A stretch of DNA of 63,236 nucleotides, filler included, from Octopus bimaculoides (lineage: Eukaryota): assembly GCF_001194135.2 (NCBI RefSeq). It is 3 parts of 3 records of this genome, joined end to end, with 100 filler letters (N's around TTAATTAATTAA, not from the genome) between each part and the next. Parts side by side here need not be neighbours in the genome. Positions count along the whole stretch, not along the records: positions 1 to 29,600 come from NC_068993.1; 2 more parts are not named here. One strand, written 5' to 3'. Below the pieces are notes generated by a model that saw only the letters and a program-made list of their open reading frames with translations, was not told the DNA's origin and did no database searches. Each line of letters starts with the position of its first letter. Positions within the stretch are counted from its first letter, which is position 1. Below, piece after piece: positions 1-28,875 of the stretch. The position numbers and the translations under genes were made by a program.

Positions 1-360
1 AAATCAATATTTTTCTATCCTTCCTTAATACTGGTTCCCATATGCTGCTCATATCTACACTCGGTCTGCTTAGGAGGTTGTTGTGTCCTAACATATGTGC
101 TGCTTCTTTTAGTTTTCGTATTTTCCAGTGGTGTTCTCTGTCTATTAGTTTAACTTCATCCCACAGGGAGAGGTGGTCTACATTTTTCCATACATGATCA
201 GCTATACCCGATTTATCAATATCTCCTCGTGTCACAAATTTGCGATGTTCGTCTACCCTTATTTTGAGGGGGCGACATGTTTCACCTTTATATAACCTAC
301 CACAGTTGCATGGGATGGAGTACACGCAGTCTTTGGTCATATTCTCTTCTATTGGTGTTC
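1..360 (-). mobile_element. Penelope-like element, GIY-YIG endonuclease coding fragment (5'-truncated, runs off window start)
   Basis: Manual minus-strand translation is open for about 120 codons: RTPIEENMTKDCVYSIPCNCGRLYKGETCRPLKIRVDEHRKFVTRGDIDKSGIADHVWKNVDHLSLWDEVKLIDREHHWKIRKLKEAAHM. This shows the VY-x-IPC-x-CG-x2-YxGET-x-R-x-L-x2-R-x2-EH pattern of PLE GIY-YIG domains. It is absent from the ORF track, probably because no stop falls in the window. Confidence 0.9.
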
Positions 361-371
361 TTTTTATTATT

Positions 372-455
372 AACAGCGACTTTGAAGTTTCCGCCAGCTA
401 AGCCATTGTCAGACAATGGCTTAACAAGCCAAAACTTTGAACTCCCTGTCAACAA
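372..455. ncRNA. Head-to-head pair of degenerate hammerhead-like cores (PLE pLTR-type)
   Basis: Minus from 412: CTGACAAT-GGC-TTAGCTG-GCG-GAAAC-TTCAAA-GTC. Plus from 412: GACAAT-GGC-TTAACAA-GCC-AAAAC-TTTGAA-CTC. The perfect 12-bp inverted repeat 399-410/412-423 marks the junction. Confidence 0.6.
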
Positions 456-2917: not shown

Positions 2918-3775
2918 ACTCATATGATGTAGCTATATATAATACATATATATTTATGTGTGTGTGTGTGTATATACATATAAAGATATAACTATATGTA
3001 TATATAGACATATATTTATATATATGCAGGCTCATTTTTACATTATTTAGCCATGCTAAATATATACATAGAAAACACATATATACATAAAACATACTTA
3101 TATACATACACACGCACACACACACATATATACAGTCGTTTTATCATCATTATTTTATGATTTTTACTTTGTATTACATTATACTTATTTATCGTGCATT
3201 TACTTATTAATTTTTCTATATGTGACTGTGGATTTTCATGGATGAGTTCATGAACTTTGGTTCTTTTCTCTAAAACTATATATTCATATATATATATATA
3301 TATATATATAAGCATGCAATTACACAAATATGTTGGGCGATATACNNNNNNNNNNNNNNNNNNNNNNNNNNNNNNNNNNNNNNNNNNNNNNNNNNNNNNN
3401 NNNNNNNNNNNNNNNNNNNNNNNNNNNNNNNNNNNNNNNNNNNNNNNNNNNNNNNNNNNNNNNNNNNNNNNNNNNNNNNNNNNNNNNNNNNNNNNNNNNN
3501 NNNNNNNNNNNNNNNNNNNNCTGCTTAATGAGACAATACATGTTTGTCTTTCAAATTTAAACATTTTTTTTATATTTGCTATTTTGATTTTGCAAAATAT
3601 CGTAGTGAAAATATTTGCCATTTGTAAACTCTCCAAAAATTAATTTGAAGTTCAACACACACATACACACACATGTTAACTCATAAACACATAGAAAGTG
3701 AGATTGGGGCACCTCAGCCTTGGAGAAACAAGAAAGATGTACTTCAAAAATGTAGACCTAAGCAGAAGGATATAG

Positions 3776-4249: not shown

Positions 4250-5223
4250 TGACCTTTGCCTTTCATCTATCCCAGGTCAATAAAATAAGTAGCAATCTGG
4301 TAGTGGAGTTGATGTGTTCAACTAGCCCATCCCCTCAAAATTTCAGGCTTTGTGTCTAAATTAGAGACGAGTGTGGTGGAGTGGGACAATGGTTAGAATG
4401 CCTTGTGATATGTGTTATGCTGCTTTACATTCAGAGTTCAAATCCTGGCTGAGGACCACTTCATCTTTCACAAACAGTGGATTGATAGAATCAGAGTGTC
4501 ATAAAAATATGTGTTGTGGTATCTTCTAGGTCTTTATGTCCTGAGTTCAATTCTCACTTGAATCAACTTTATTTTTCATCTTTTCAGGGTTGATGTACCA
4601 GCTAGACACTGGGGGTCAATGTAATCAACTTACTTCTCCCTTAAAATTCTTAAGCTTCTGCCAAAATTGATTCTTAAGGCAGTGAGCTGGCAGAATTATT
4701 AGTACATTGGACAAAATGCTTAGCAGCACTTCTTCCAGCTCTTTATGTTCTGAGTTCAAATTCTGTCAAAGTCAGCTTTATCACTCATTCTTTCAGGGCC
4801 AGTAAGAGGAACCAGTTGAGCACTGAAATCGATGTAATTGACTAGCCCCTCCCCACAAAATTTCCATCTTTCTGTCTATAGTAAATATAATAATTATTAT
4901 GATTTTTAAGGCATTGAGATGGCAGAGTCATTAGTGTATTCGACAAAATCATTTGCAGCATTTCTTCTGGCTCTTTGGTTCTAAGTTCAAATTCTACCAA
5001 GGTCTTGACTGACATACTTTGGGGGTTGATGAAATAAAGTACCAGTTGAGTAATGCATGTCAATGGGATCAATTTACCCCTTCCTGAAAATTACTATTAT
5101 TAGGTCAACTTTGCCTTTCATCTTTTTGGGGTTGATAAATTAAGTAGCAGTTGCATCCTGAGGTAGATCTAATCGACTGGCCCCCTCCCCCAAAACTTCG
5201 GGCCTTGTACCTAGAGTAGAAAA

Positions 5224-5271
<48 letters not shown>

Positions 5272-6121
5272 AGGCAGCGAGCTGGCAGAATCATTAGCAC
5301 GCTGGGTGAAATGCTTAGTGGTATTTTGTCTGCCGCTATGTTGCAAGTTCAAATTCCACCAAAGTCAACTTTGCCTTTCGGGGTTGGTTAAATAAGTACC
5401 AGTTATGCACTGGGGTCGATGAGATCGACTAGCTCCTCCCCCAAATTTCAGGCCTTGTGCCTATAGTAGAAAGGATTATTATTATTTTTATTGGTGAGTT
5501 GCTGACGGAACTGTTAGCACACCAGGCAAAATCCTTTGCAGCATTTTGTCCATCTTTATATCGTGAGTTCAAATCCTGCCAAGGTTGACTTTGCCTTTCA
5601 TCCTATTGGGTTCGATAAAATAAGTATCTGTTGAACACTAGGTTGATATAATCCACTTACACCCTCCCTTGATCTTGCTGGTCTTGTGCCAAAATTTGAA
5701 ACCATTATTATTGTTATTATTATTAAGGCGGTGAGCTGGCGGAATCATTAGTATATGGGGCCAAATTTCTTCATAGCATTTCATCAGTCTTTACATCCTG
5801 CCCGAGTTTGAATTCCACTGAAGCTGATTTTACCTTTCATCCTTCTGGGTTTGATCAAATAAGCACTGGTCAAATACTGGGGTTAATGTGATCAACTAGC
5901 CCCCTCTCCCAAAATTTCAGACTTTGTGTTTATAGTAGAAAGGAGGGAAGGGGAATAGTCGATCACTTCGACTCCAGTGTTTCACTGGTACTTGATTTAT
6001 CGACCCTGAAAGATGAAAGGCAAAGTCAACCTCGGTGGAATTTGAACACAGAACGTGAAGATGGATGTATATCACTAATCATTTCACCCAGTGAGCTAAT
6101 GAATCTGCCAGCTAGCTGTCT
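4250..6121. mobile_element. Cluster of about 9 full or partial family A tRNA-derived SINEs (mostly +, last copy -)
   Basis: Repeated head AAGGCRGYGAGCTGGCAGAATC, box-B-like GAGTTCAAATTC and body CTTTGCCTTTCATCC-GGGGTYGATAAAATAAGTACCAG. Starts at about 4676, 4913, 5271, 5490 and 5725 (+), and 5950-6121 (-); several follow (ATT)n tracts. Confidence 0.9.
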
Positions 6122-8319: not shown

Positions 8320-8530
8320 GCTGAGTTGCAGAATCATTAGCACACTGGCTGAAATGCTTAATGGTATTTCATCTGCCCCTATGTTCTGAGTTCAAATTTC
8401 ACTGAGGCCACCTTTACCTTTTATTCTTTCAGGGTCGGTAAAATAAGTACTATTGAAACAATGGGGTCGATGTAATTGACTCTTCCTTTCCCCAACATTT
8501 CAGTCCTTGTGCCTATAGTAGGAAAGGAAA
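8320..8530 (+). mobile_element. Family A SINE
   Basis: GCTGAGTTGCAGAATCATTAGCAC...GAGTTCAAATTTC...GGGTCGGTAAAATAAGTAC...CCTTGTGCCTATAGTAGG. Confidence 0.85.
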
Positions 8531-9200: not shown

Positions 9201-9407
9201 TATATATATATTTACCAAGATACTTATTTGAGCATCTGGGACATTTTCTTCAATTAATTGTTCCCTAAACAGTCTGTTTCTTCTCAGTCTTGGACATTTA
9301 GTTGCTTGTTTTCATTTTCTCTTTTGGGGTTTTGGCCATCGAGGTGTTTAGTTGATTAGCATAATAATGAGTAGTAACCAGTTTGGATGTAAAAATGTTA
9401 TCATCAT

Positions 9408-9855
9408 CATCGTTTAACGTCCGCTTTCCATGCTAGCATGGGTTGTACGATTTGACTGAGGACTGGTGGACCAGGAGGTGACACCAGGCTCCAATCTGAT
9501 TTGGCAGAGTTTCTACAGCTGGATGCCCTTCCTAACGCCAACCACTCTGAGAGTGTAGTGGGTGCTTTTACGTGTCACCGGCACGAAGGCCAGTCAGGAG
9601 GTACTGGCAACAGCCACGCTCGAAATGGTGTATTTTACGTGCCACCTGCACAAGGGCCAGTCCAGCGGTACTGGCAATGAACTCGCTCGAATGTCTTTTC
9701 ACGTGCTACTGGCACAAGTGCCAGGAAGGCGACGTTGGTAATGGTCACGCTCAAATGGTGCTATTTACGGGCCACCGGCACGAAAGCCAGACAGCTGGTG
9801 CTCTGGCAACGATCACACTCGGACGGTGCTCTTAGTGATTTACTGGTACAGGTGT
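9408..9855 (-). mobile_element. Family C retroposon with (GAT)n tail and about 60-bp internal tandem modules
   Basis: Shares GGTTGGCGTTAGGAAGGGCATCCAGCTGTAGAAAC and the tail with 15262-15457 (+), 13880-14065 (+), 25688-26270 (-) and 26700-26880 (-). Confidence 0.85.
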
Positions 9856-10108: not shown

Positions 10109-10712
10109 TAATAATCTTTTCTATAAGCACAAGGCCTGAAATTTTTTGGGGAAGGGACTAGTCGATTACATCGACCCAGTGTTTCACTGGTACTTTTTAA
10201 ATCAGCCCTGAAAGGATGAAAGGCTGAATTTGAACTCAGAACGTAAATACTGCAAAGCATTTTGCCTGGTGTGCTAACAATTCTGCCAGCTTGGCACCAT
10301 AACAACAACAAATACTACTACTACGATAATAATAATAATAATAATAACAATAATAATAATAATAATAATTTAACTCTTTATTGCCCACAGGGGTTAAACA
10401 GACGCCAGAGCATAACTGGTACTTACTTAATTGACCCCAGAAGGATGAAAAGCAAAGTTGGCCTCGGTGGAATTTGAACTCAGAATGTAACGGCAGACAA
10501 AATACCGCTAAGCATTTTGCCTGGTGTGCAAATGATTCTGCCAGCTCGTTAGTTTGAAATTCTGGTACAAGGCCAGAAATTTTGGAGGAGGAGTAAATCA
10601 ATCATATTGATGACTGTGTTTAACTGGTACTTATTTTGGTCGACAGTGAAAGACAGTCAACCTTGGAAGAATTTGAACCCATTTTGTCCGCTAATGATTC
10701 TACCAGCTCACC
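10095..10712 (-). mobile_element. Three adjacent family A SINEs
   Basis: Reverse-complement head GATTCTGCCAGCT at about 10280, 10535 and 10697; AATTTGAACTCAGAACGT box at 10228 and 10471. Confidence 0.85.
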
Positions 10713-11482: not shown

Positions 11483-11897
11483 CATATACACACGTGCACA
11501 CACACACACACACACAGATATTTACGTGTGTGTGTGTGTGTGTGTGTGTGTGAAGGCTGAGTGAAGGTGAGAGGTGTACAAGATTACTTTGCACTTGTAT
11601 CCAGTAGGTCGTCAGTCTGTTGATGGCATCTAAGCCATATCTAAGAAATGTTCAGGTCATAATCAGTGGCACCATTATTAATTTGATAACTTGAACTATA
11701 TCAAATTATATCNNNNNNNNNNGCACCATTATTAATTTGATAACTTGAACTATATCAAATTATATCGGCCCAGGGGTGTGGCTGTGTGTGTGTGTGTGTA
11801 TGGTCGTGGCAGGGGAAGTGGCGAGTTGGAGAAGGAAGAGGAAGAAAGTAGAAGGTGAGGAATAGAAAGCAAAGAAGGGAGCAACAGCAGCTACCTA

Positions 11898-11929
<32 letters not shown>

Positions 11930-11999: not shown

Positions 12000-12215
12000 T
12001 CCTAAAAGCACAAGGCCTGAAATTTGGCAGGAGGGGGTTTAGTCAACTACATTGACCGCAGTGTTTCACTGGTACTTAATTTATTGGTCCTGAAAGGATG
12101 AAAGGCAAAGTCAACCTCAGCAGAATTTGAAAAATTTGGACTCAGATTGTAGCAATGAATAAAATGCTGGAAAGCATTTTGCCAGCTTTGCTACCGATTC
12201 TGCCAGCTCACCTCC
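12000..12215 (-). mobile_element. Family A SINE
   Basis: GCACAAGGCCTGAAATT...GGATGAAAGGCAAAGTCAACCTC...GATTCTGCCAGCTCAC. Confidence 0.85.
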
Positions 12216-12249
12216 TTAACAGTAATAATAATAATATATAAGGATAATG

Positions 12250-13429: not shown

Positions 13430-13640
13430 ATCTTTTCTAGTATAAGTACAAGAGCTAAAATCTTTTGTGGAGAGGCTAGTTGATTACATCGACCTCAATG
13501 TATGACTGGTACTTATTTTATCGACTCCCAGAAGGACGAAAGGTGAAGTTAACCTTGGTGGAATTTGAACTCAAAGCACAAAGCTAGAAGTATCCCTTAA
13601 CCATTTTGCCAGATGCAGTAATGATTCTGCCAGCTCACAA
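13430..13640 (-). mobile_element. Family A SINE
   Basis: GTACAAGAGCTAAAATC...GGAATTTGAACTC...GATTCTGCCAGCTCAC. Confidence 0.8.
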
Positions 13641-13655
13641 TCTTAATAATAATGG

Positions 13656-13879: not shown

Positions 13880-14065
13880 GGGGTGCTGGTGCACCCAGGA
13901 CACTTTGTGGAGTGGTTGGTGTTAGGAAGAGCATCCAGCCGTAGAAACTAAACCAAAACAAACTATAGGATCTGGTGCAGCCTTTGGTCTTATCAGTTCC
14001 TGCCAAACTGTCCAAACCCATGCTAACATGGAAAACAGATGTTAAATGTTGATGATGATGATGAT
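13880..14065 (+). mobile_element. Family C tail with (GAT)n end
   Basis: GGAGTGGTTGGTGTTAGGAAGAGCATCCAGCCGTAGAAAC...CCATGCTAACATGGAAAACAGATGTTAAATGTTGATGATGAT. Confidence 0.8.
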
Positions 14066-14302: not shown

Positions 14303-14911
14303 TGCTGTATTAACCTCTAAATGTGTTAATCTGACTATCTATTTTAAACTCTACTGTTTCCAACACACTTATATATATTTAGTGTATTAATCAGATGAAA
14401 GGATGATGTTGCTGTTGTTGTTGTTGCTATGATGAAATGATAATGTTGTTGTTCATGTTAAAGCAGCTGTTATATAGCTACATTGCCGATAAAACATCAA
14501 CTTCAATTATCTATTGGCTGCAAGGTATATATGTTAAACTCATCATTTCTCATAACTCCAGTAATAGTAGTAGCAGCAGCAGCAGCAGCAGTAGTTGTTG
14601 TGTTAATGTAACAGTAGTGGTGGTCGTAGTGGTCATTTTTATTATTATAGTGGCATCTTTATAATTACAATAATTAAGGTGTGATAAGCTGGCAGAATCA
14701 TTAACAAAAAGGTTTGCAACATTTTTTTAGGCTCTTTACTTTCTGAATTCGTTTTCTGATGAGGTTGATTTTGTCTCTAATCCTTTCAGGGGTCAATAAA
14801 ATAATCACCAGATAGGCCCCAGGGTCTGCTTTGCTTGTTGCAAAATTAGCGACTGAGTGGTGCTTGATTTTCTATATATCAAACTGCAGCAAACTAGTGC
14901 CGTCTCTTGCA

Positions 14912-14978
14912 GACAGGGTGTCCAGCACTGAGGATGGGCAATACTAGCCTGAAACCACACTGGTCTGTTGGTCCTGTC
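14912..14978 (+). ncRNA. Type I hammerhead ribozyme (complete fold, GUC cleavage after 14965)
   Basis: Stem I: GACAGGG-[UGU]-CCAGCA (14912-14927) pairs with UGUUGG-UCCUGUC (14966-14978). Core CUGAGGA 14928-14934 plus an extra U. Stem II GGGC/GCCU with loop AAUACUA. GAAA 14951-14954. Stem III ACCA/UGGU with loop CAC. C17 = 14965. Confidence 0.85.
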
Positions 14979-15261
14979 ACTAGAAGGTGGTAGGGGTTTG
15001 TTCCCCTGATTGCAATATATTAGATGCAGCTGTGCATCATTAACCAGTTAGAGGAAATGTCCTTTTGGGGTTAAAAAAATTATAGTAATATCCGTTCATA
15101 TGGAACAGCAATGTTGAAGTAGGGAGTAACTGTTGTGGAAGGATCCTGACCACCCCCACGTAACCAAAAAGTGGTCAGATGCATTTCAATGAAATAAAGA
15201 AACGTGGGCTGGTATTCACTCCTGAATTATTTGCTCATTATTGGAATTGCCTGATTGGCCT

Positions 15262-15457
15262 TCATGCCGGTGGCACGTAAAAGCTCTCACTACACTCTCG
15301 GAGTGGTTGGTGTTAGGAAGGGTATCCAGCTGTAGAAACTCTGCCAAATCAGATTGGAGCCTGGTGTAGCCATCTGGCTCACCAGTCCTCAGTCAAATCA
15401 TCCAACCCATGCAAGCATGGAAAGTGGACGTTAAACGATGATGATGATGATGATGAT
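15262..15457 (+). mobile_element. Family C retroposon, 3' part with (GAT)n tail
   Basis: Near-exact reverse complement of 9408-9590. Confidence 0.9.
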
Positions 15458-15954
15458 TGGAATTATTTTCACACTATGATTTGGTGCAAAACAAATCAGA
15501 GCATCACAGACTTGAACGTGATGGGTTGGGAGATTTTTCATCATGGTAATACGTGCTGAGAGAGGAGAGGCTATAATGCCAGTCCATGTGAGTCCCAAAA
15601 CTAGAAAATATTTAGCTGGTTGCTATATAGGTATGCTGAATGATCTTCTTGACCCTTTTGCTCATAGATGGTTGATTTCTGTAGTTATTATCAGTGTTAC
15701 TTTTTTCGGCAGTTAGATAAGAGTTTTGACTGTTATTTCCAGCAGGTAAACATACTCAGTATGTCTTTTGATTAATATAAATTTTAATCCTTCAGCTATT
15801 TAATACTTTTCTGGGGCTTGCAATTGCCTATATTATTAATTCTGTTATTATCAATTTAATTATATTACCCTAGATAATAATAGAGTTAATAATATCTTCA
15901 CAACTATTCACTCCTGAGTTATTTGTTCATTATATATATATATATATATATATC

Positions 15955-16309: not shown

Positions 16310-17829
16310 CACACATATACATATATACATACATATATACAAACATATATATACAAACATATACATATATACATACACCCCCACACACGCATATACACAT
16401 GCATATACACATGCATATATATACATATATATCCTCATTTAGGCAGACACTTTTCCATGCTTGCATTGCCCAGATGAAACGAGGTAGATTCACAATGGTT
16501 GCATGTACTCCCTTCCTCTCTTCAGCCTGTTTCAAATCAAAGCCTCTTAGCAGGACATATTATTGTGGAAGACTAGAAATGAATGACACTGCTTGTATGA
16601 CAGTGACTCTCACTTACAAATATCATGTGATGTCAAGACAGAAGGATTCAAAGACAGACTTGCTTTGTCCTTCCTTCTTCTCTCTCTCCCTCCCCAGTCT
16701 CTCTGTAAATGCTTGTAATGGCATATTTTTCCATTCTCCATCATAAGTGTGGGAATGGAATATATATATATATATATATTGTATTTGTGTAACATTGTCT
16801 GTTTTTTTCCGTCTTTGTTTTCGTATACATTCGCTGTTTTCTTCCAAGGAATCTAATGCTCTTAGCTTAGTTTTTCTTCGGAGCTGGTCAGATTGGAGCA
16901 ACCTCAAGTATAATCAGCTGAAATTGCGAAGATAATCTGAAACTTGACTGAGGAAAGAAAACTCTGAATGACCCGTCCTTGTTTTCTTTGTATCGTCCAT
17001 CTGGATTCTGGATGTATCCCTTTCTTGTATCACCTAACTGCCAAGATGTTTTGCTGTCTTGTCCCATTTTGTATTTTCATATATATATACATACATACAT
17101 ATATATANNNNNNNNNNNNNNNNNNNNNNNNNNNNNNNNNNNNNNNNNNNNNNNNNNNNNNNNNNNNNNNNNNNNNNNNNNNNNNNNNNNNNNNNNNNNN
17201 NNNNNNNNNNNNNNNNNNNNNNNNNNNNNNNNNNNNNNNNNNNNNNNNNNNNNNNNNNNNNNNNNNNNNNNNNNNNNNNNNNNNNNNNNNNNNNNNNNNN
17301 NNNNNNNNNNNNNNNNNNNNNNNNNNNNNNNNNNNNNNNNNNNNNNNNNNNNNNNNNNNNNNNNNNNNNNNNNNNNNNNNNNNNNNNNNNNNNNNNNNNN
17401 NNNNNNNNNNNNNNNNNNNNNNNNNNNNNNNNNNNNNNNNNNNNNNNNNNNNNNNNNNNNNNNNNNNNNNNNNNNNNNNNNNNNNNNNNNNNNNNNNNNN
17501 NNNNNNNNNNNNNNNNNNNNNNNNNNNNNNNNNNNNNNNNNNNNNNNNNNNNNNNNNNNNNNNNNNNNNNNNNNNNNNNNNNNNNNNNNNNNNNNNNNNN
17601 NNNNNNNNNNNNNNNNNNNNNNNNNNNNNNNNNNNNNNNNNNNNNNNNNNNNNNNNNNNNNNNNNNNNNNNNNNNNNNNNNNNNNNNNNNNNNNNNNGAC
17701 TGAAACAAGTAAAAGAGTAAAAGAGCATATGTAATTACTTGGACTTTCGGTATATGTCTCTTGGTATGTCGATTAAAGCCCATTCACCGTTTGGGCTACC
17801 TGATGTCATCCACAGTAATATAATTTTCA

Positions 17830-18067
17830 AGGCAGCGAGCTGGCAGAAACGATAGCATGCCGGGCGAAATTCTTAATGGGTTTTTGTCTGCCGCTATGTT
17901 CTGAGTTTAAATTCCGCTGAGGTCGACTTAGCCTTTCATCTTTTCGGGGTTGATTAAATAAGTACCAGTTACGCACTGGGGTCGATGTAATCGACTTTAT
18001 CCCTTTGTCTGTCCTTGTTTGTCCCCTCTGTGTGTAGCCCCTTGTGGGCAATAAAGAAATAAGTAAC
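17830..18067 (+). mobile_element. Full-length family A SINE with 13-bp target-site duplication
   Basis: AATATAATTTTCA at 17817-17829 and 18068-18080 flanks the complete head, body and tail. Confidence 0.92.
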
Positions 18068-20286: not shown

Positions 20287-20830
20287 AGGTGGTGGAAAGA
20301 AATGAAATTACATGGCCAATTCCTGCAACAAACTGAGGTTGTTTGAAGTAAAGAACATTGGCCATAGCTGACAGATTGAAGCCTGGAATGAGAGACAGAA
20401 GGGCTAATTATAGCCACTCAGGTACATGTCATTAGGATGAAACTGGTAAAGGCGAGGATTGAAAAGACTCAGTCAGAGAGCAAATGAAGAATCTGTTGGA
20501 AAGGTGACAAAAGTATCAGTCACCTCTTAAGTGAATGCAGTAAACTAGCACAAAAAGAGTGTAAGTCTTGGCATGACCGTGTAAGTATAAGTTTGCATTG
20601 GGATGTTAGCCAAGTGTGTGGCTTTGAGATAACAGGAAAGTGATATGAACATGAGAAAGAGGTTGTGATTGAAAAAAGGAACTGCAGGATCTTATGGGTC
20701 TTCATCAGAAAGACTGACCATACTATTTAAGCAAGAAGACCAGATATGATTATAAAGGACAAAATGAATGAACAGTGTGAGATCATAGACTTTGTAATTC
20801 AATATAATAACTGGGTCAATATCAAATTGA
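20287..20830 (+). pseudogene. R4/Dong-like non-LTR retrotransposon C-terminal fragment (CCHC knuckle plus restriction-like endonuclease)
   Basis: One frame with scattered stops: WWKEMKLHGQF...ETEGLIIATQ...*RICWKGDKSISHLLSECSKLAQKECKSWHDRV...LHW...*YEH...ILWVF...TDHTI*ARRPDMIIKDKMNEQCEIIDF. Confidence 0.85.
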
Positions 20831-20989: not shown

Positions 20990-21412
20990 GTTGACTATGC
21001 TTTTCATCTTTTTGGGGTTCGATGAAATAAGTAACAGTTAAGTATTAGGTTGAGGTAAATGATTAGCCCCTCCCCACAAATTTCAGGCCTTGTGCCTATA
21101 GTAAAACAGGATTATAATTATTATCATTATTATTATTATTATTATTATAGTTATTATTATAATCATCAGTATTATTTTTATTATAAGAATAATAGGAACC
21201 CTTTCTACTAAAGGCACAAGGCCTGAAATTTGGAGGAGGGGGCCTGTTGATTAGATTGCCCCCAGTATGCAACTGCTACTTAATTTATCGACCCCAATAG
21301 GATGAAAGACAAAGTCAACCCGGGCGGAATTTGAACTCAGAACGTAAAGATGGATGAAATGCTGTCAAACGTTTTGCCTGGCATGCTAACGATTCTGCCA
21401 GCTCGCTGCCTT
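20990..21412. mobile_element. Two family A SINEs in inverted (tail-to-tail) orientation
   Basis: 3' part on + at about 20990-21105; complete copy on - at about 21200-21412, separated by an (ATT)n tract. Confidence 0.85.
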
Positions 21413-22660: not shown

Positions 22661-23522
22661 GATATACATCATCACCATCACTATCATATCATGTTAATGT
22701 CCACTTTTTCATGTTTGGATCGGCCATGCTGTTCTACATATTCTGAGTTCAAATTCCACTGAGGTTACCTTTGTCTTTCATTTCTTCAGGGACTGATAAA
22801 CTGAGTACCAGTCAATTACTAAACAACTTATTTCCTCCCCTCAAAATTGCTGGCCCTGTGCCAAAATTTGAAACCATTATGTTTAGCTAGTGAGTGCAAG
22901 TATGACTGTTTGGATAAGAAGTCTAATTCATGTGCGTGTATGTGTGTGTGTGCGTGCATGTGTGCATGTGTGTATGTGTGCGTGCATGTGTGTGTGTTAT
23001 TCTTCTTTAAAGAACAGATTTAAGTATACATAGAGTAAAAACATGAAAAAGAGAGGGGAATGAAAGGGGTGGGGGAGTGGTTGGTTGGGTGGATTGTTGT
23101 TGAGGAGGGGTGGGCACAGAGGGAAAAGAAGGGTATAGGGCGAAGGGTGAGGGCAGGTGAGATAGAGATATGGGATGGGTAACTCAGTGTTAGGTGTATG
23201 GAACATTGGACAGCAGGGAGGGCAGAGACACATGGTGGGGGATTTGGAAAGAAATATTGGAATGAGTGGTGAGTGTACCTTATATTTAGATACAGAAACC
23301 CAGGTGAGGAGAAATGCTTCAGGTAGATTATATACATACACACCCCGTGCGTGTGCACACGCGTACGTGCACGCACACACATGCCCTCTCACATATGTGT
23401 ATATGTTTATATATCTATATATATTAAATGTGCATATATATATAGATAGACATGCACACACACACACACACACACATATATGTATATATACATGCATTCA
23501 TACAAATGTACATATACAGATA

Positions 23523-25301: not shown

Positions 25302-25687
25302 NNNNNNNNNNNNNNNNNNNNNNNNNNNNNNNNNNNNNNNNNNNNNNNNNNNNNNNNNNNNNNNNNNNNNNNNNNNNNNNNNNNNNNNNNNNNNNNNNNN
25401 NNNNNNNNNNNNNNNNNNNNNNNNNNNNNNNNNNNNNNNNNNNNNNNNNNNNNNNNNNNNNNNNNNNNNNNNNNNNNNNNNNNNNNNNNNNNNNNNNNNN
25501 NNNNNNNNNNNNNNNNNNNNNNNNNNNNNNNNNNNNNNNNNNNNNNNNNNNNNNNNNNNNNNNNNNNNNNNNNNNNNNNNNNNNNNNNNNNNNNNNNNNN
25601 NNNNNNNNNNNNNNNNNNNNNNNNNNNNNNNNNNNNNNNNNNNNNNNNNNNNNNNNNNNNNNNNNNNNNNNNNNNNNNNNNNNNNNT

Positions 25688-26270
25688 GGATGCCCTTCCT
25701 AATGCCAACCACTCCGAGCATGTAGTGGGTGCTTTTACATACCACCGGCACAAAGGCCAGTCAGGTGATACTGGCAATGGCCACGCTCAAAATGGTGTAT
25801 TTTACGTACCATCTGCACAAGAGCCAGTCCAGCGGTACTGGCAATGACCTCGCTCGAATGCTTTTTCATGTGCCACTGGCAAAAGTGCCAGTGAGGCGAC
25901 GCTGGTAATGGTCATGCTCAAATGGAGCTATTTATGTGCCACTGGCATGGAAGCCAGACAGCTGCTCTGGCAATGATCTCACTCAGACGGTGCTCTTAGT
26001 GCTTCACTGGTATAGGTGCCATCACGATTTCGATTTCACTTGCCCCAACAGGTCTTTGCAAGCAGAGTTTAGTGTCCAATGAAGGAGAGGTTGGTATGGC
26101 TGCCAGTCATCGAATTTGGTTCGATTTCGATTTCACTTGCCCCAACAGGTCTTCGCAAGCCGAGTTTAGTGTCCAATGAAGGAGAGGTTGGTATGGGTGC
26201 CAGTCGTCAAATTTGGTTCGATTTCGATTTCACTTGCCTCAACAGGTGCTTTTTATGTGCCATTGGCATA
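25688..26270 (-). mobile_element. Family C composite element with 60-bp modules and a 97-bp tandem repeat (about 2.3 copies)
   Basis: 25688-26020 is collinear with 9520-9855. CGATTTCGATTTCACTTGCC recurs at 26025, 26122 and 26219 (period 97). Confidence 0.85.
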
Positions 26271-26699
26271 CACACACATATATATATACACACATATACA
26301 TACACACACACACGCACACACACACACATATATATAAAGTGGGTGATGGGCAGAACTGCTTGAGAATCAGATAGATTACTTGCAGCATTTGTTCCTGTTC
26401 TCTACACCCAAGTTTCAATTCCTGCTGAGGTCAACTTTGCCTTTCATCCAATTGAGGGTTGATAGATATAGTACCAGTCTAGTACTGGGGCCAATTCTTG
26501 TTTTTCTCTCAATCTTTCAGTCTATCTGACTTTTCCTCACTTGGAAGAAATCTGCTGTCAGAACAGAAAGCAGGATGGCAGGAATTAGCAAGTCTAAAAA
26601 TACTTATGACTTGTCATAAGCATTTATGACACACCACTATGACTCCATTAAGTAGTTGACAGCCCAAGGTAAGCCATATATGCATATATATTGATATAT

Positions 26700-27305
26700 C
26701 ATCATCATCATCATCATTATTTAATGTCTGTTTTCCATGCTGGTATGGGTTAGATAATTTGACATGGAGCTAGCCAGCTAGGGAGCTGTCCAAATCCAAT
26801 TGTCTGTTGTAGCATGGTTTCTATAGATGGATGCCATTCCTAATGCCAACCACCTTACAGAGTGTACTGGGTGCTTTTTGCATTAAATTTGCTTGACAAG
26901 TACATGGTTTTTGGTTCAGTCCCACTGCATGCCATCTTGGGAAAATATCTTCAAATATTTCCCTTGGCCGATCAAAGCCTTGTGAGTGGATTTGTTAGGC
27001 AGAAACTGAAAGAAGCCTATAATATATTTATATAAGTATATGTGTGTGCATGTGGGTATATTTGTGTGAGTGTGATTTTGACTTAGCATTGGATGACAAT
27101 TGTAAAGGAGTGCCACTGTCATACAAGCAGTGTCATTCATTTCTAATATTGTGTGAAAACATATCTGAATATTGAGAAATATTACCATGCTTGAAAACAG
27201 GTGAGGGTTGATGACAAGAAAGGCATCTTGCCATAAAAAACCCGCCTCAAAAATCTCTGTCCAACCAATGGAAGCATGGAAAATTGGACACTGAAATGAC
27301 AATGA
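26700..27305. mobile_element. Family C tail (-) followed by family B-related SINE (+)
   Basis: (CAT)n-TTTAATGTCTGTTTTCCATGC at 26700; GGTTCAGTCCCACTGC...CTTGTGAGTGGATTTG at 26912-26995; the tail is shared with 18590-18715 and 16570-16640. Confidence 0.7.
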
Positions 27306-28055
27306 CTATATATATATATATANNNNNNNNNNNNNNNNNNNNNNNNNNNNNNNNNNNNNNNNNNNNNNNNNNNNNNNNNNNNNNNNNNNNNNNNNNNNNN
27401 NNNNNNNNNNNNNNNNNNNNNNNNNNNNNNNNNNNNNNNNNNNNNNNNNNNNNNNNNNNNNNNNNNNNNNNNNNNNNNNNNNNNNNNNNNNNNNNNNNNN
27501 NNNNNNNNNNNNNNNNNNNNNNNNNNNNNNNNNNNNNNNNNNNNNNNNNNNNNNNNNNNNNNNNNNNNNNNNNNNNNNNNNNNNNNNNNNNNNNNNNNNN
27601 NNNNNNNNNNNNNNNNNNNNNNNNNNNNNNNNNNNNNNNNNNNNNNNNNNNNNNNNNNNNNNNNNNNNNNNNNNNNNNNNNNNNNNNNNNNNNNNNNNNN
27701 NNNNNNNNNNNNNNNNNNNNNNNNNNNNNNNNNNNNNNNNNNNNNNNNNNNNNNNNNNNNNNNNNNNNNNNNNNNNNNNNNNNNNNNNNNNNNNNNNNNN
27801 NNNNNNNNNNNNNNNNNNNNNNNNNNNNNNNNNNNNNNNNNNNNNNNNNNNNNNNNNNNNNNNNNNNNNNNNNNNNNNNNNNNNNNNNNNNNNNNNNNNN
27901 NNNNNNNNNNNNNNNNNNNNNNNNNNNNNNNNNNNNNNNNNNNNNNNNNNNNNNNNNNNNNNNNNNNNNNNNNNNNNNNNNNNNNNNNNNNNNNNNNNNN
28001 NNNNNNNNNNNNNNNNNNNNNNNNNNNNNNNNNNNNNNNNNNNNNNNNNNNNNNN

Positions 28056-28194: not shown

Positions 28195-28875
28195 TGCGAT
28201 GAAATTAGACATCACACAACTAAGGACTCCAAAAGAAAATAACAAGGAACATACTATTCCATTTATTAATACACACAAACCTGGAATAACCAATATTTTC
28301 CATGTTATACAATTAAACCTATCATTACTCTTATAGAGCACCAAAATGAGAAATCTGATAGATAAAAGCTATCTATGAAATAGTAAATGCCAAAGAAAAA
28401 AAAAATAACCTTAAAAAAATAACACAGAAGGGCAAAATTCACATCAGAGAATGAAACAGAATTCTCCATAAAAGAATGTGGAGATAGAAGATGTGGAATA
28501 TGCAACAGCAGCAATAACTTCAAATATATAGATGGTGACACCCATATAAAATTTAAGAGTGGATTCTCATTCAACGTAAATGCAAATAAGAACTGCAAGA
28601 CACAAAATCTCATTTACTGCATTACTTGCCCCAAATTCAAGGAAAATTATATTGGTGAAAACAATAATTCCCTTTGCCAACACACAAGAATCCACAGACA
28701 GCAAATCTGACATGAGGAACTATGGAAAATTTCACAGAGCAAATGTTTGGAAATATGTAGATAAGGAAAATTCAAGATCTTTCCCTTCTATAAATGCTCA
28801 AGGAATGGCTCAAACTTCCAAAAGACAATGGAACTATATTTCATAAAGAAGTTCTCGCCAAAGTTAAATGGTTGA
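28195..28875 (+). pseudogene. Penelope-like element (Neptune-type) linker, Cys cluster and GIY-YIG endonuclease
   Basis: 28441-28875 in one frame: FSIKECGDRRCGIC...FKSGFSFNVNANKNCKTQNLIYCITCPKFKENYIGENNNSLCQHTRIHRQQI*...FKIFPFYK...ELYFIKKFSPKLNG*. Upstream is LDITQLRTPKE...IPFINTHKP. The Neptune assignment rests on the CxxxxCxxC cluster before the LIY...YIG motif. Confidence 0.85.

What the first reader, a model, noticed from the sequence alone, without database searches (positions are those of the whole stretch)
14912..14978. Complete type I hammerhead ribozyme in apparently non-coding DNA
Seen: every hammerhead element is present in register. Core CUGAGGA, GAAA and a GUC site at 14963-14965. 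Stem II is 4 bp with a 7-nt loop, stem III is 4 bp, and stem I is 6+7 bp interrupted by a 3-nt UGU bulge. Known: a stem I bulge facing the stem II loop is the tertiary-contact architecture of fast natural type I hammerheads, as in Schistosoma Sm-alpha and metazoan retrozymes. An extra base after A9 occurs in some natural hammerheads. Inference: it is likely active or recently active. The one clear defect is G.U instead of G-C at the base of stem II, explicable as CpG decay of C14950. It is not inside any PLE coding remnant here.
Basis: partly seen in the sequence, partly recalled or inferred. Interest (0 to 1): 0.88.

Follow-up and report, generated by a model that had tools for sequence, protein, structure and literature searches.

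The report
Solitary decaying hammerhead ribozyme in octopus DNA
A single, nearly intact copy of a well-known self-cleaving RNA motif (a type I hammerhead) sits in repeat-rich non-coding octopus DNA; it is very unlikely to be chance and is most likely a leftover of a retrotransposon-type element, which makes it ordinary for an animal genome.

Summary
At 14912-14978 (+) every hammerhead element is present and in register: core CUGAGGA, GAAA, GUC, and helices I (6+7 bp with a UGU bulge), II (4 bp) and III (4 bp counting A15.1-U16.1).

A descriptor loosened just enough to admit it finds only this site in the window. In 120 Mb of composition-matched random sequence it found none with helix I of 5 bp or more, so I extrapolate about 1e-5 expected per window.

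It is not a textbook copy:
- Rfam gives no hit at gathering score. The best match is the HH9 model, full length, at 13.3 bits against a 52-bit cut-off.
- The 10.1-11.1 pair is G.U.
- There is an extra U after A9.
- A shifted helix II register is predicted to be more stable than the active one.

Changing T14950 back to C, which reverses one CpG-to-TpG decay (window CpG o/e is 0.33), makes the exact hammerhead fold the minimum-energy structure.

The window is octopus DNA. The motif is solitary: no tandem partner, no other copy in the window or in about 100 kb of related loci, and no homologue in the public collections I could search.

Best reading: a lone relic of a retrozyme- or Penelope-lineage type I hammerhead, with residual activity at most. 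It is a new member of a known kind, of low to moderate interest.

The parts
14912..14918 (+). Helix I, distal part, 5' strand (GACAGGG)
   Evidence: Pairs with 14972-14978, 7 bp. Pair probabilities are 0.83-0.99.
14919..14921 (+). UGU bulge in helix I, the candidate partner of loop 2
   Evidence: It lies 6 bp from the core, where the HH9 model has its internal loop.
14922..14927 (+). Helix I, proximal part, 5' strand (CCAGCA)
   Evidence: Pairs with 14966-14971, 6 bp including one G.U. Pair probabilities are 0.69-0.90.
14928..14934 (+). Catalytic core C3-A9 (CUGAGGA; N7 = G)
14935..14935 (+). Extra unpaired U between A9 and G10.1
   Evidence: A nucleotide at this position is conserved in Penelope-element hammerheads (PMC4209133). 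The O. vulgaris min-hammerhead in L001 has an A at the same place.
14936..14950 (+). Helix II (GGGC / GCCU, 4 bp) with 7-nt loop 2 (AAUACUA). The 10.1-11.1 pair is G14936.U14950.
   Evidence: This register has only about 0.2 probability in the present sequence and 0.98-0.99 if T14950 is C.
14951..14954 (+). Core G12 A13 A14 A15.1 (GAAA)
14955..14963 (+). Helix III (CCA / UGG) with 3-nt loop CAC. It is not palindromic.
   Evidence: Pair probabilities are 0.5-0.77.
14964..14965 (+). U16.1 and C17. The predicted cleavage is between C14965 and U14966.
   Evidence: The cleavage position is inferred from standard hammerhead numbering.
14966..14978 (+). Helix I, 3' strand (UGUUGG + UCCUGUC)
14687..14826 (-). 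Flanking copy of a roughly 160-nt interspersed (SINE-like) repeat. It is not part of the ribozyme.
   Evidence: It matches more than 10 other copies in the window and one in O. vulgaris locus L001.
15245..15450 (+). Flanking SINE insertion with an ATTGGAATT target-site duplication. It is not part of the ribozyme.

Best explanation
This is a solitary, slightly decayed copy of a type I hammerhead ribozyme in octopus non-coding DNA.

It most likely arrived as part of a retroelement of the Penelope/retrozyme lineage, either a solo retrozyme monomer or a pLTR fragment. Its surroundings have since been overwritten by SINE insertions.

If the + strand is transcribed, the RNA can form the three-way junction of helices I, II and III around the CUGAGGA/GAAA core. 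It could then cleave itself after C14965, leaving a 2',3'-cyclic phosphate and a 5'-OH at U14966.

One C-to-T change at a CpG (C11.1 to U, position 14950) turned the conserved G10.1-C11.1 pair into G.U and shifted the predicted folding towards a mis-registered helix II. Present activity is therefore probably weak or lost.

Shown: the motif, its non-random nature, its solitary state in the sequence examined, the octopus origin, and the effect of T14950 on predicted folding. Inferred: the retroelement origin, the direction of the mutation, and any catalysis.
For: - The motif is complete and in register.
- It is the only descriptor hit in the window. The random expectation is about 1e-5 per window.
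- The Rfam HH9 model aligns over its whole length (positions 1-77) with matching helix lengths.
- Helices I and III are strongly predicted on the isolated 67-mer.
- The hammerhead fold lies 1 kcal/mol above the MFE. It becomes the MFE (-23.0 kcal/mol, helix II probability 0.98-0.99) when T14950 is changed to C.
- The window is strongly CpG-depleted (o/e 0.33) with TpG in excess (1.36).
- Host is octopus: an ORF at 2-397(-) is 85% identical to an Octopus vulgaris protein, and the window shares SINE families with O. vulgaris chromosome OX597819.1.
- That O. vulgaris locus carries a Penelope-type min-hammerhead with the same extra nucleotide between A9 and G10.1. Its chance expectation is below 0.001 per 100 kb.
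- Literature: the extra nucleotide between 9 and 10.1 is conserved in Penelope-element hammerheads, and canonical metazoan type I hammerheads have helix I of 6 bp and helix II of 4 bp (PMC4209133).
- Literature: solo retrozyme monomers are common in vertebrate genomes (bioRxiv 10.64898/2026.07.22.740005).
- Literature: an axolotl hammerhead with a U.U at the base of helix II still cleaves 22% in one hour (PMC7229834).
Against: - There is no Rfam hit at gathering score. The HH9 match is 13.3 bits against 52, with E = 1.2 even in a 191-nt search.
- No other copy of 14813-15250 exists in the window or in about 100 kb of related loci.
- There is no tandem repeat and no adjacent RT/EN coding sequence, so the link to a retroelement is by analogy only.
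- Six-frame protein searches and two exact-pattern metagenome scans found nothing.
- The 415-nt surrounding segment is not unusually structured (z = -0.67), unlike the highly self-paired retrozyme circRNAs.
- Loop 2 and the bulge do not show the conserved tertiary-contact nucleotides.
- The descriptor statistics are post hoc.
Confidence: 0.6

Rival explanations
1. Member of a currently active retrozyme or Penelope-like family. The hammerhead is functional and processes element transcripts, possibly into circRNAs. The other copies simply lie outside the sequence I could see.
For: - All invariant core bases are intact, and all 21 helix pairs are standard pairs (three of them G.U).
- The architecture is that of canonical retrozyme-type hammerheads.
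- Non-Watson-Crick pairs at the base of helix II are tolerated in a natural family.
- Penelope-type hammerheads do occur in octopus.
Against: - It is a single copy with no tandem partner within 29.6 kb. Helix III is not palindromic, so a dimer is not expected either.
- The flanks are occupied by unrelated SINEs.
- No related sequence turned up in any search.
- The active helix II register is disfavoured in the present sequence.
Confidence: 0.12
2. Domesticated solitary hammerhead, comparable to the amniote intronic HH9/HH10 ribozymes. It would be kept by selection in a host transcript, where self-cleavage modulates RNA processing.
For: - It is isolated rather than tandem, as the mammalian intronic hammerheads are (PMC7229834; PMC6155905).
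- The best Rfam match is the HH9 model, aligned over its full length.
- The core and helices are unusually clean for repeat-rich, CpG-decaying DNA.
Against: - No host gene is visible. The window is microsatellites, SINEs and TE fragments, with no convincing exon.
- The conserved G10.1-C11.1 pair is damaged, and this misdirects predicted folding. That looks like neutral decay, not constraint.
- The HH9 score is far below threshold.
- Conservation could not be tested.
Confidence: 0.06
3. Chance resemblance. The pattern arose at random and was picked out because a very large amount of sequence was screened by eye.
For: - The Rfam covariance models do not find it significant.
- The fold energy of the 67-mer is not exceptional (z = -0.79).
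- The loose core pattern alone occurs at chance frequency: 2 found against 0.97 expected.
- The number of windows scanned is unknown, and there is no independent copy.
Against: - With helices required, the expectation is about 1e-5 per window. The distal helix lowers it about another hundredfold. By my extrapolation that is well under one expected site in a genome of a few Gb.
- One CpG-type reversal yields a perfect MFE hammerhead.
- The extra nucleotide sits exactly where Penelope-type hammerheads carry one.
- Rfam also misses the clearly non-random O. vulgaris min-hammerhead, so its silence carries little weight here.
Confidence: 0.05

Closest known systems
Canonical metazoan type I hammerheads of non-LTR retrozymes (Schistosoma Sm-alpha, coral, mussel and amphibian satellite-type repeats)
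   Same: - It is type I, with helix I open.
- Helix I has 6 bp up to an internal bulge, and helix II has 4 bp with a small loop.
- It has a full catalytic core with a GUC site.
- It lies in low-GC, non-coding, repeat-rich DNA.
   Different: - It is not in a 170-400-bp tandem repeat; only a single copy is present.
- It has an extra U after A9 and a G.U at 10.1-11.1.
- The bulge is on the 5' strand only, and the loop/bulge sequences are not the conserved contact nucleotides.
- The surrounding 415 nt are not strongly self-paired.
Minimal hammerheads of Penelope-like elements (Cervera and de la Pena 2014, PMC4209133)
   Same: [quoted passage not shown]
- It occurs in a genome that carries Penelope-like remnants and at least one such min-hammerhead.
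   Different: - Helix II is 4 bp, not 6-8 bp.
- Helix I is long (13 bp with a bulge), not 4-5 bp.
- Helix III is a real 4-bp hairpin with a non-palindromic loop, so it should act as a monomer rather than a dimer.
- It is not in a pLTR next to an RT-EN ORF.
Rfam Hammerhead_HH9 (RF02275), the intronic hammerhead of amniote RECK genes
   Same: - It is the best-scoring Rfam family.
- The alignment covers the whole model, with the same order and nearly the same lengths of helices.
- It is solitary rather than tandem.
   Different: - The score is 13.3 bits against a gathering score of 52.
- The helix, loop and bulge sequences differ.
- The host is a cephalopod, not an amniote.
- No intron context or conservation has been shown.
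CChMVd (+) and other hammerheads with an extra nucleotide after A9 (De la Pena and Flores 2001, cited in PMC4209133)
   Same: It has one extra nucleotide between A9 and G10.1 (for the citation; the details are from my own knowledge).
   Different: Those are type III viroid ribozymes. They have no relation in sequence or setting to this motif.

Membership tests
Hammerhead ribozyme (Rfam clan CL00010) | Conserved core: C3 U4 G5 A6 N7 G8 A9, G12 A13 A14, A15.1-U16.1, H17 | tested here: met
   CUGAGGA 14928-14934, GAAA 14951-14954, U14964, C14965.
Hammerhead ribozyme (Rfam clan CL00010) | Three helices around the core forming a three-way junction | tested here: met
   Helix I is 6+7 bp, helix II 4 bp, helix III 4 bp. 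Helices I and III are in the MFE and the ensemble. Helix II in the active register has only about 0.2 probability.
Hammerhead ribozyme (Rfam clan CL00010) | Highly conserved G10.1-C11.1 Watson-Crick pair directly after A9 | tested here: not met
   The pair is G14936.U14950, and an extra U14935 precedes it. C at 14950 would restore the pair and make the hammerhead fold the MFE.
Hammerhead ribozyme (Rfam clan CL00010) | Score at or above the gathering threshold of an Rfam hammerhead model | tested here: not met
   There were no hits at gathering. The best is HH9 at 13.3 bits against 52. A clearly non-random octopus min-hammerhead is also missed, so this test has low sensitivity here.
Hammerhead ribozyme (Rfam clan CL00010) | Mg2+-dependent self-cleavage 3' of position 17 | not testable with these tools
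   This needs in vitro transcription and cleavage assays.
Canonical metazoan type I hammerhead / non-LTR retrozyme | Type I topology with helix I of about 6 bp up to an internal loop, and helix II of about 4 bp | tested here: met
   Definition from PMC4209133. The lengths match the HH9 model structure line.
Canonical metazoan type I hammerhead / non-LTR retrozyme | Conserved loop 1 - loop 2 tertiary-contact nucleotides | tested here: inconclusive
   A UGU bulge and an AAUACUA loop are in the right places. However, they differ from the HH9 consensus (UUAC/UAC and CAAAA), and no 3D test was possible.
Canonical metazoan type I hammerhead / non-LTR retrozyme | Occurs in head-to-tail repeats of about 170-400 bp (dimers to multimers) | tested here: not met
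   There is no second copy of 14813-15250 anywhere in the window. Solo monomers are, however, described for vertebrate retrozymes.
Penelope-like element min-hammerhead | [quoted passage not shown] | tested here: met
   U14935. Feature from PMC4209133.
Penelope-like element min-hammerhead | Long helix II (6-8 bp), short helix I (4-5 bp), and helix III absent or palindromic (dimeric action) | tested here: not met
   Helix II is 4 bp and helix I is 13 bp. Helix III is CCA/UGG with loop CAC, which is not self-complementary.
Penelope-like element min-hammerhead | Located in a pseudo-LTR flanking an RT-GIY-YIG ORF | tested here: not met
   The nearest Penelope-like ORF remnants are at 2-397(-) and 28423-28707(+), at least 13 kb away. 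Their GIY-YIG identity rests on a motif I recognised and was not confirmed.
Hammerhead_HH9 (RF02275) | Sequence-level match to the ultraconserved amniote intronic ribozyme | tested here: not met
   13.3 bits against a gathering score of 52.

The most novel reading that the evidence does not exclude
The motif may be the visible member of an undescribed cephalopod hammerhead class. That class would combine the canonical type I architecture (6-bp helix I plus bulge, 4-bp helix II, stable monomeric helix III) with the Penelope-type extra nucleotide after A9.

It could be either a retrozyme family still mobile in octopus or a solitary copy conserved and exapted in a host transcript. In either case it would be a structural intermediate linking retrozyme and Penelope hammerheads in molluscs.
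Probability: 0.08. Interest if true: 0.55.

Novelty: new member of a known kind. Interest (0 to 1): 0.28.

Why it matters
Type I hammerheads are already known in thousands of copies across animal genomes, tied to Penelope-like elements and retrozymes, so one more copy changes little.

It has two modest points of interest:
- My two full-text searches found no paper describing hammerheads in octopus or other cephalopods.
- This copy mixes a canonical architecture with the extra nucleotide typical of Penelope-element ribozymes. That fits the recent proposal that animal retrozymes derive from Penelope pLTRs.

It is also a clean example of a structural weakness of the motif. The conserved C11.1-G12 step is a CpG in DNA, so it is a built-in decay hotspot in methylated genomes. 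Here that single change is predicted to flip the fold.

Tried and rejected
- Rfam at gathering score on the whole window gave nothing. At E up to 10 on 191 nt it gave only a weak HH9 match.
- The fold-energy z-scores of the 67-mer (-0.79) and of the 415-nt segment (-0.67) are uninformative.
- I searched for other copies in the window by BLAST at word sizes 11 and 7. There are none; only the flanking SINEs repeat.
- An 80-aa frame across the motif, and then all six frames of 14827-15240, were searched against 5.8 billion proteins to catch spurious ORFs on sister copies. There were no hits.
- Two exact-pattern scans of JGI metagenome contigs found nothing.
- Exact look-ups of three window ORFs, tried to locate the source contig, were not on record.
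- I fetched seven loci via homologues of the Penelope-like ORF.
  - None is orthologous to the window, and none contains the candidate's sequence.
  - Only one other hammerhead turned up, the L001 min-hammerhead.
- ARAGORN found no tRNA genes or tRNA-like heads.
- I tried to confirm the GIY-YIG nature of the 2-397(-) ORF. Pfam and PDB sequence searches found nothing, and the AlphaFold model was too poor to use (pLDDT 54). No fold search was run.
- Rejected: that the motif is the antisense of a SINE head. The SINE ends at about 14826, and none of its more than 10 other copies extends into this sequence.
- Rejected: dimeric action. Helix III is not palindromic.

Full report
**What is there.** The sequence at 14912-14978 (+) reads GACAGGG-UGU-CCAGCA-CUGAGGA-U-GGGC-AAUACUA-GCCU-GAAA-CCA-CAC-UGG-U-C / UGUUGG-UCCUGUC.
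- the core C3-A9 (N7 = G) and G12-A15.1;
- the A15.1-U16.1 pair and a GUC site with C17 = C14965;
- helix II of 4 bp with a 7-nt loop;
- helix III of 4 bp, counting A15.1-U16.1, with a 3-nt loop;
- helix I of 6 bp, a UGU bulge on the 5' strand, and 7 more bp.

There is an extra U14935 between A9 and G10.1, and G14936.U14950 stands in place of G10.1-C11.1.

**Is it more than chance?** The bare core pattern is not significant: 2 matches against 0.97 expected. With the helices required the picture changes.
- I wrote a type I descriptor loose enough to admit this site. It allows 0-1 inserted base, G-C or G-U at 10.1/11.1 and G.U pairs in stems. It requires helix II of at least 4 bp, helix III of at least 4 bp and helix I of at least 6 bp.
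- It finds only this site on both strands of the window.
- In 120 Mb of first-order Markov sequence with the window's dinucleotide frequencies, 31 sites matched without any helix I requirement. Ten had at least 1 bp of helix I, one had at least 4, and none had 5 or more.
- By my extrapolation this gives roughly 5e-6 to 1.4e-5 expected per window for a 6-bp helix I. The 7-bp distal helix lowers it about another hundredfold. That is well below one expected site even in a genome of a few Gb.
- The descriptor is post hoc and I do not know how much sequence the scan covered. The margin is nevertheless large.

**What the curated models say.** Rfam gives no match at gathering score anywhere in the window.
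- A permissive search of 191 nt gives Hammerhead_HH9 at 13.3 bits (gathering score 52, E = 1.2). It aligns over the full model, positions 1-77, with the same order and nearly the same lengths of helices.
- By the models' standards this is not a member of any curated hammerhead family.
- The same tool also misses, even at E up to 10, a Penelope-type min-hammerhead in Octopus vulgaris. That motif is itself far beyond chance. Rfam's silence is therefore weak evidence for this class of animal hammerheads.

**Folding.**
- On the isolated 67-mer the MFE keeps helices I and III exactly as in the hammerhead. It pairs A6-G8 with the 3' strand of helix II in a shifted register.
- The hammerhead fold is -20.6 kcal/mol and the MFE is -21.6 kcal/mol. 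The active helix II has about 0.2 probability and the shifted register about 0.64.
- If T14950 is replaced by C, the exact hammerhead structure becomes the MFE (-23.0 kcal/mol) and helix II reaches 0.98-0.99.
- T14950 is followed by G14951, so the change is the CpG-to-TpG type. The window has CpG o/e 0.33 and TpG o/e 1.36.
It also suggests that the present copy is damaged rather than maintained.

**Context.** The window is AT-rich (35% GC) and full of microsatellites, assembly gaps and interspersed repeats. It has no convincing exon.
- It is octopus DNA. An ORF at 2-397(-) is 85% identical to an Octopus vulgaris hypothetical protein.
- The window shares that element at 90% nucleotide identity, plus several SINE families, with O. 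vulgaris chromosome OX597819.1.
- The hammerhead lies in a roughly 415-nt stretch that is unique within the window. On one side is a SINE-like copy at 14687-14826(-). On the other is a SINE at 15245-15450 with an ATTGGAATT target duplication.
- There is no second copy, no tandem repeat and no adjacent RT or endonuclease coding sequence.
- The two ORF remnants that look Penelope-like to me, by a GIY-YIG-type motif I recognise from my own knowledge, are at 2-397(-) and 28423-28707(+), at least 13 kb away. Pfam, PDB sequence search and a low-confidence AlphaFold model did not confirm that assignment.

**Relatives elsewhere.** I could not reach an octopus genome by nucleotide search.
- These indirect routes found nothing: one 80-aa frame and then all six frames of the segment against 5.8 billion predicted proteins, two exact-pattern scans of metagenome contigs, and exact look-ups of window ORFs.
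- Seven loci fetched through homologues of the Penelope-like ORF, about 100 kb in all, contain no sequence related to the candidate.
- They do contain one Penelope-type min-hammerhead, in O. vulgaris locus L001 on the minus strand at about 11872-11925: GACAC CUGAUGA A GGCUGG..UCAGCC GAAA CG UU/GUGUU.
- It has an extra A at the same place where the candidate has its extra U. So octopus genomes do carry hammerheads of the Penelope lineage.
- No covariation test was possible.

**Comparison with what is known.**
- Cervera and de la Pena (PMC4209133) define canonical metazoan type I hammerheads by helix I of 6 bp and helix II of 4 bp interacting through loops. They define Penelope-element hammerheads by a conserved nucleotide between 9 and 10.1, G10.1-C11.1, a long helix II, a short helix I and a palindromic or absent helix III.
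- The candidate has the canonical helix lengths and a stable, non-palindromic helix III, so it would be expected to act as a monomer. It also has the Penelope-type extra nucleotide.
- Canonical type I hammerheads in animals normally sit in 170-400-bp tandem repeats called retrozymes (PMC7229834). A recent preprint derives these from Penelope pLTRs and reports many solo monomers in vertebrates.
- A natural axolotl family with a U.U at the base of helix II still cleaves, at 22% in one hour. The G.U here therefore does not exclude activity.

**Verdict.**
- The motif almost certainly descends from a real hammerhead; my estimate is about 0.9.
- The best single explanation is a solitary relic of a retrozyme- or Penelope-lineage type I hammerhead, weakened by one CpG transition, with residual self-cleavage at most (confidence 0.6).
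- The rivals are an active family member (0.12), a domesticated ribozyme (0.06) and pure chance (0.05).
- The remainder is uncertainty about origin that the tools cannot resolve.
- It is a new member of a known kind, and its interest is low to moderate.

Noticed in passing
window 2-397 (-): A 132-aa open frame cut by the window edge. It carries a motif (VYSIPCNCGRLYKGETCRPLKIRVDEHR) that I recognise as the GIY-YIG endonuclease of Penelope-like elements. It has 25 homologues, including an Octopus vulgaris 'hypothetical predicted protein' (85% identity) and many ENA contigs. Pfam, PDB sequence search and AlphaFold (pLDDT 54) do not confirm the fold.
   Followed up: partly
window 28423-28707 (+): A second open frame with a cysteine cluster followed by a GIY-YIG-like motif (NLIYCITCPKFKENYIGENNNSLCQHTRIH). 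It may be another Penelope-type endonuclease remnant. There is no Pfam hit and no hammerhead in the 900 nt downstream.
   Followed up: partly
L001 (O. vulgaris OX597819.1) about 11872-11925, minus strand: A Penelope-type minimal hammerhead next to an (AAC)n/(AAT)n microsatellite. It has an extra A after A9, a 6-bp helix II, a CG palindrome in place of helix III and a 5-bp helix I. It is far beyond chance yet invisible to Rfam even at E up to 10.
   Followed up: yes
window 15245-15450 (+); also 13891-14065, 9400-9598 (-), 26685-26874 (-), 25687-25765 (-): Copies of a roughly 200-nt SINE ending in (GAT)n. The copy at 15245 has a clean ATTGGAATT target-site duplication. A 67-bp partial tandem of its head lies at 9566-9724.
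   Followed up: partly
window 13478-13653 (+), 14687-14826 (-), and more than 10 others (for example 4670-6113, 8328-8450, 10412-10547, 12068-12226, 17837-17969, 21265-21404, 22744-22814): A second, very abundant interspersed repeat of about 160 nt, 68-83% identical between copies. It is clustered several times over in 4.6-6.1 kb and is also present in O. vulgaris L001.
   Followed up: no
window 15213-15241 and 15905-15933: A 29-nt direct repeat (93% identical) bracketing about 690 nt that includes the SINE at 15245. The second copy abuts a long (TA)n tract. Its origin is unexplained.
   Followed up: no
window 26025-26247: A 97-bp tandem repeat, 2.3 copies at 95% identity.
   Followed up: no
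window 20488-20640 (+): A short open frame (RICWKGDKSISHLLSECSKLAQKECKSWHDRV...) that resembles the C-terminal zinc-binding tail of non-LTR retrotransposon ORF2 proteins. That is from my own knowledge; there is no Pfam hit.
   Followed up: partly
window 3346-3520, 11713-11722, 17108-17697, 25302-25686, 27323-28055: Five runs of N (assembly gaps), each next to microsatellites. Any repeat structure across them is unknowable.
   Followed up: no
L002, L004, L005, L006 (ENA ERZ21867824 contigs): Long contigs from one ENA assembly carry homologues (55-60% identity) of the Penelope-like ORF, in three of the four loci with RVT_1 genes on the opposite strand within a few kb. They do not share the octopus SINEs, so they come from another, unidentified animal genome.
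   Followed up: no
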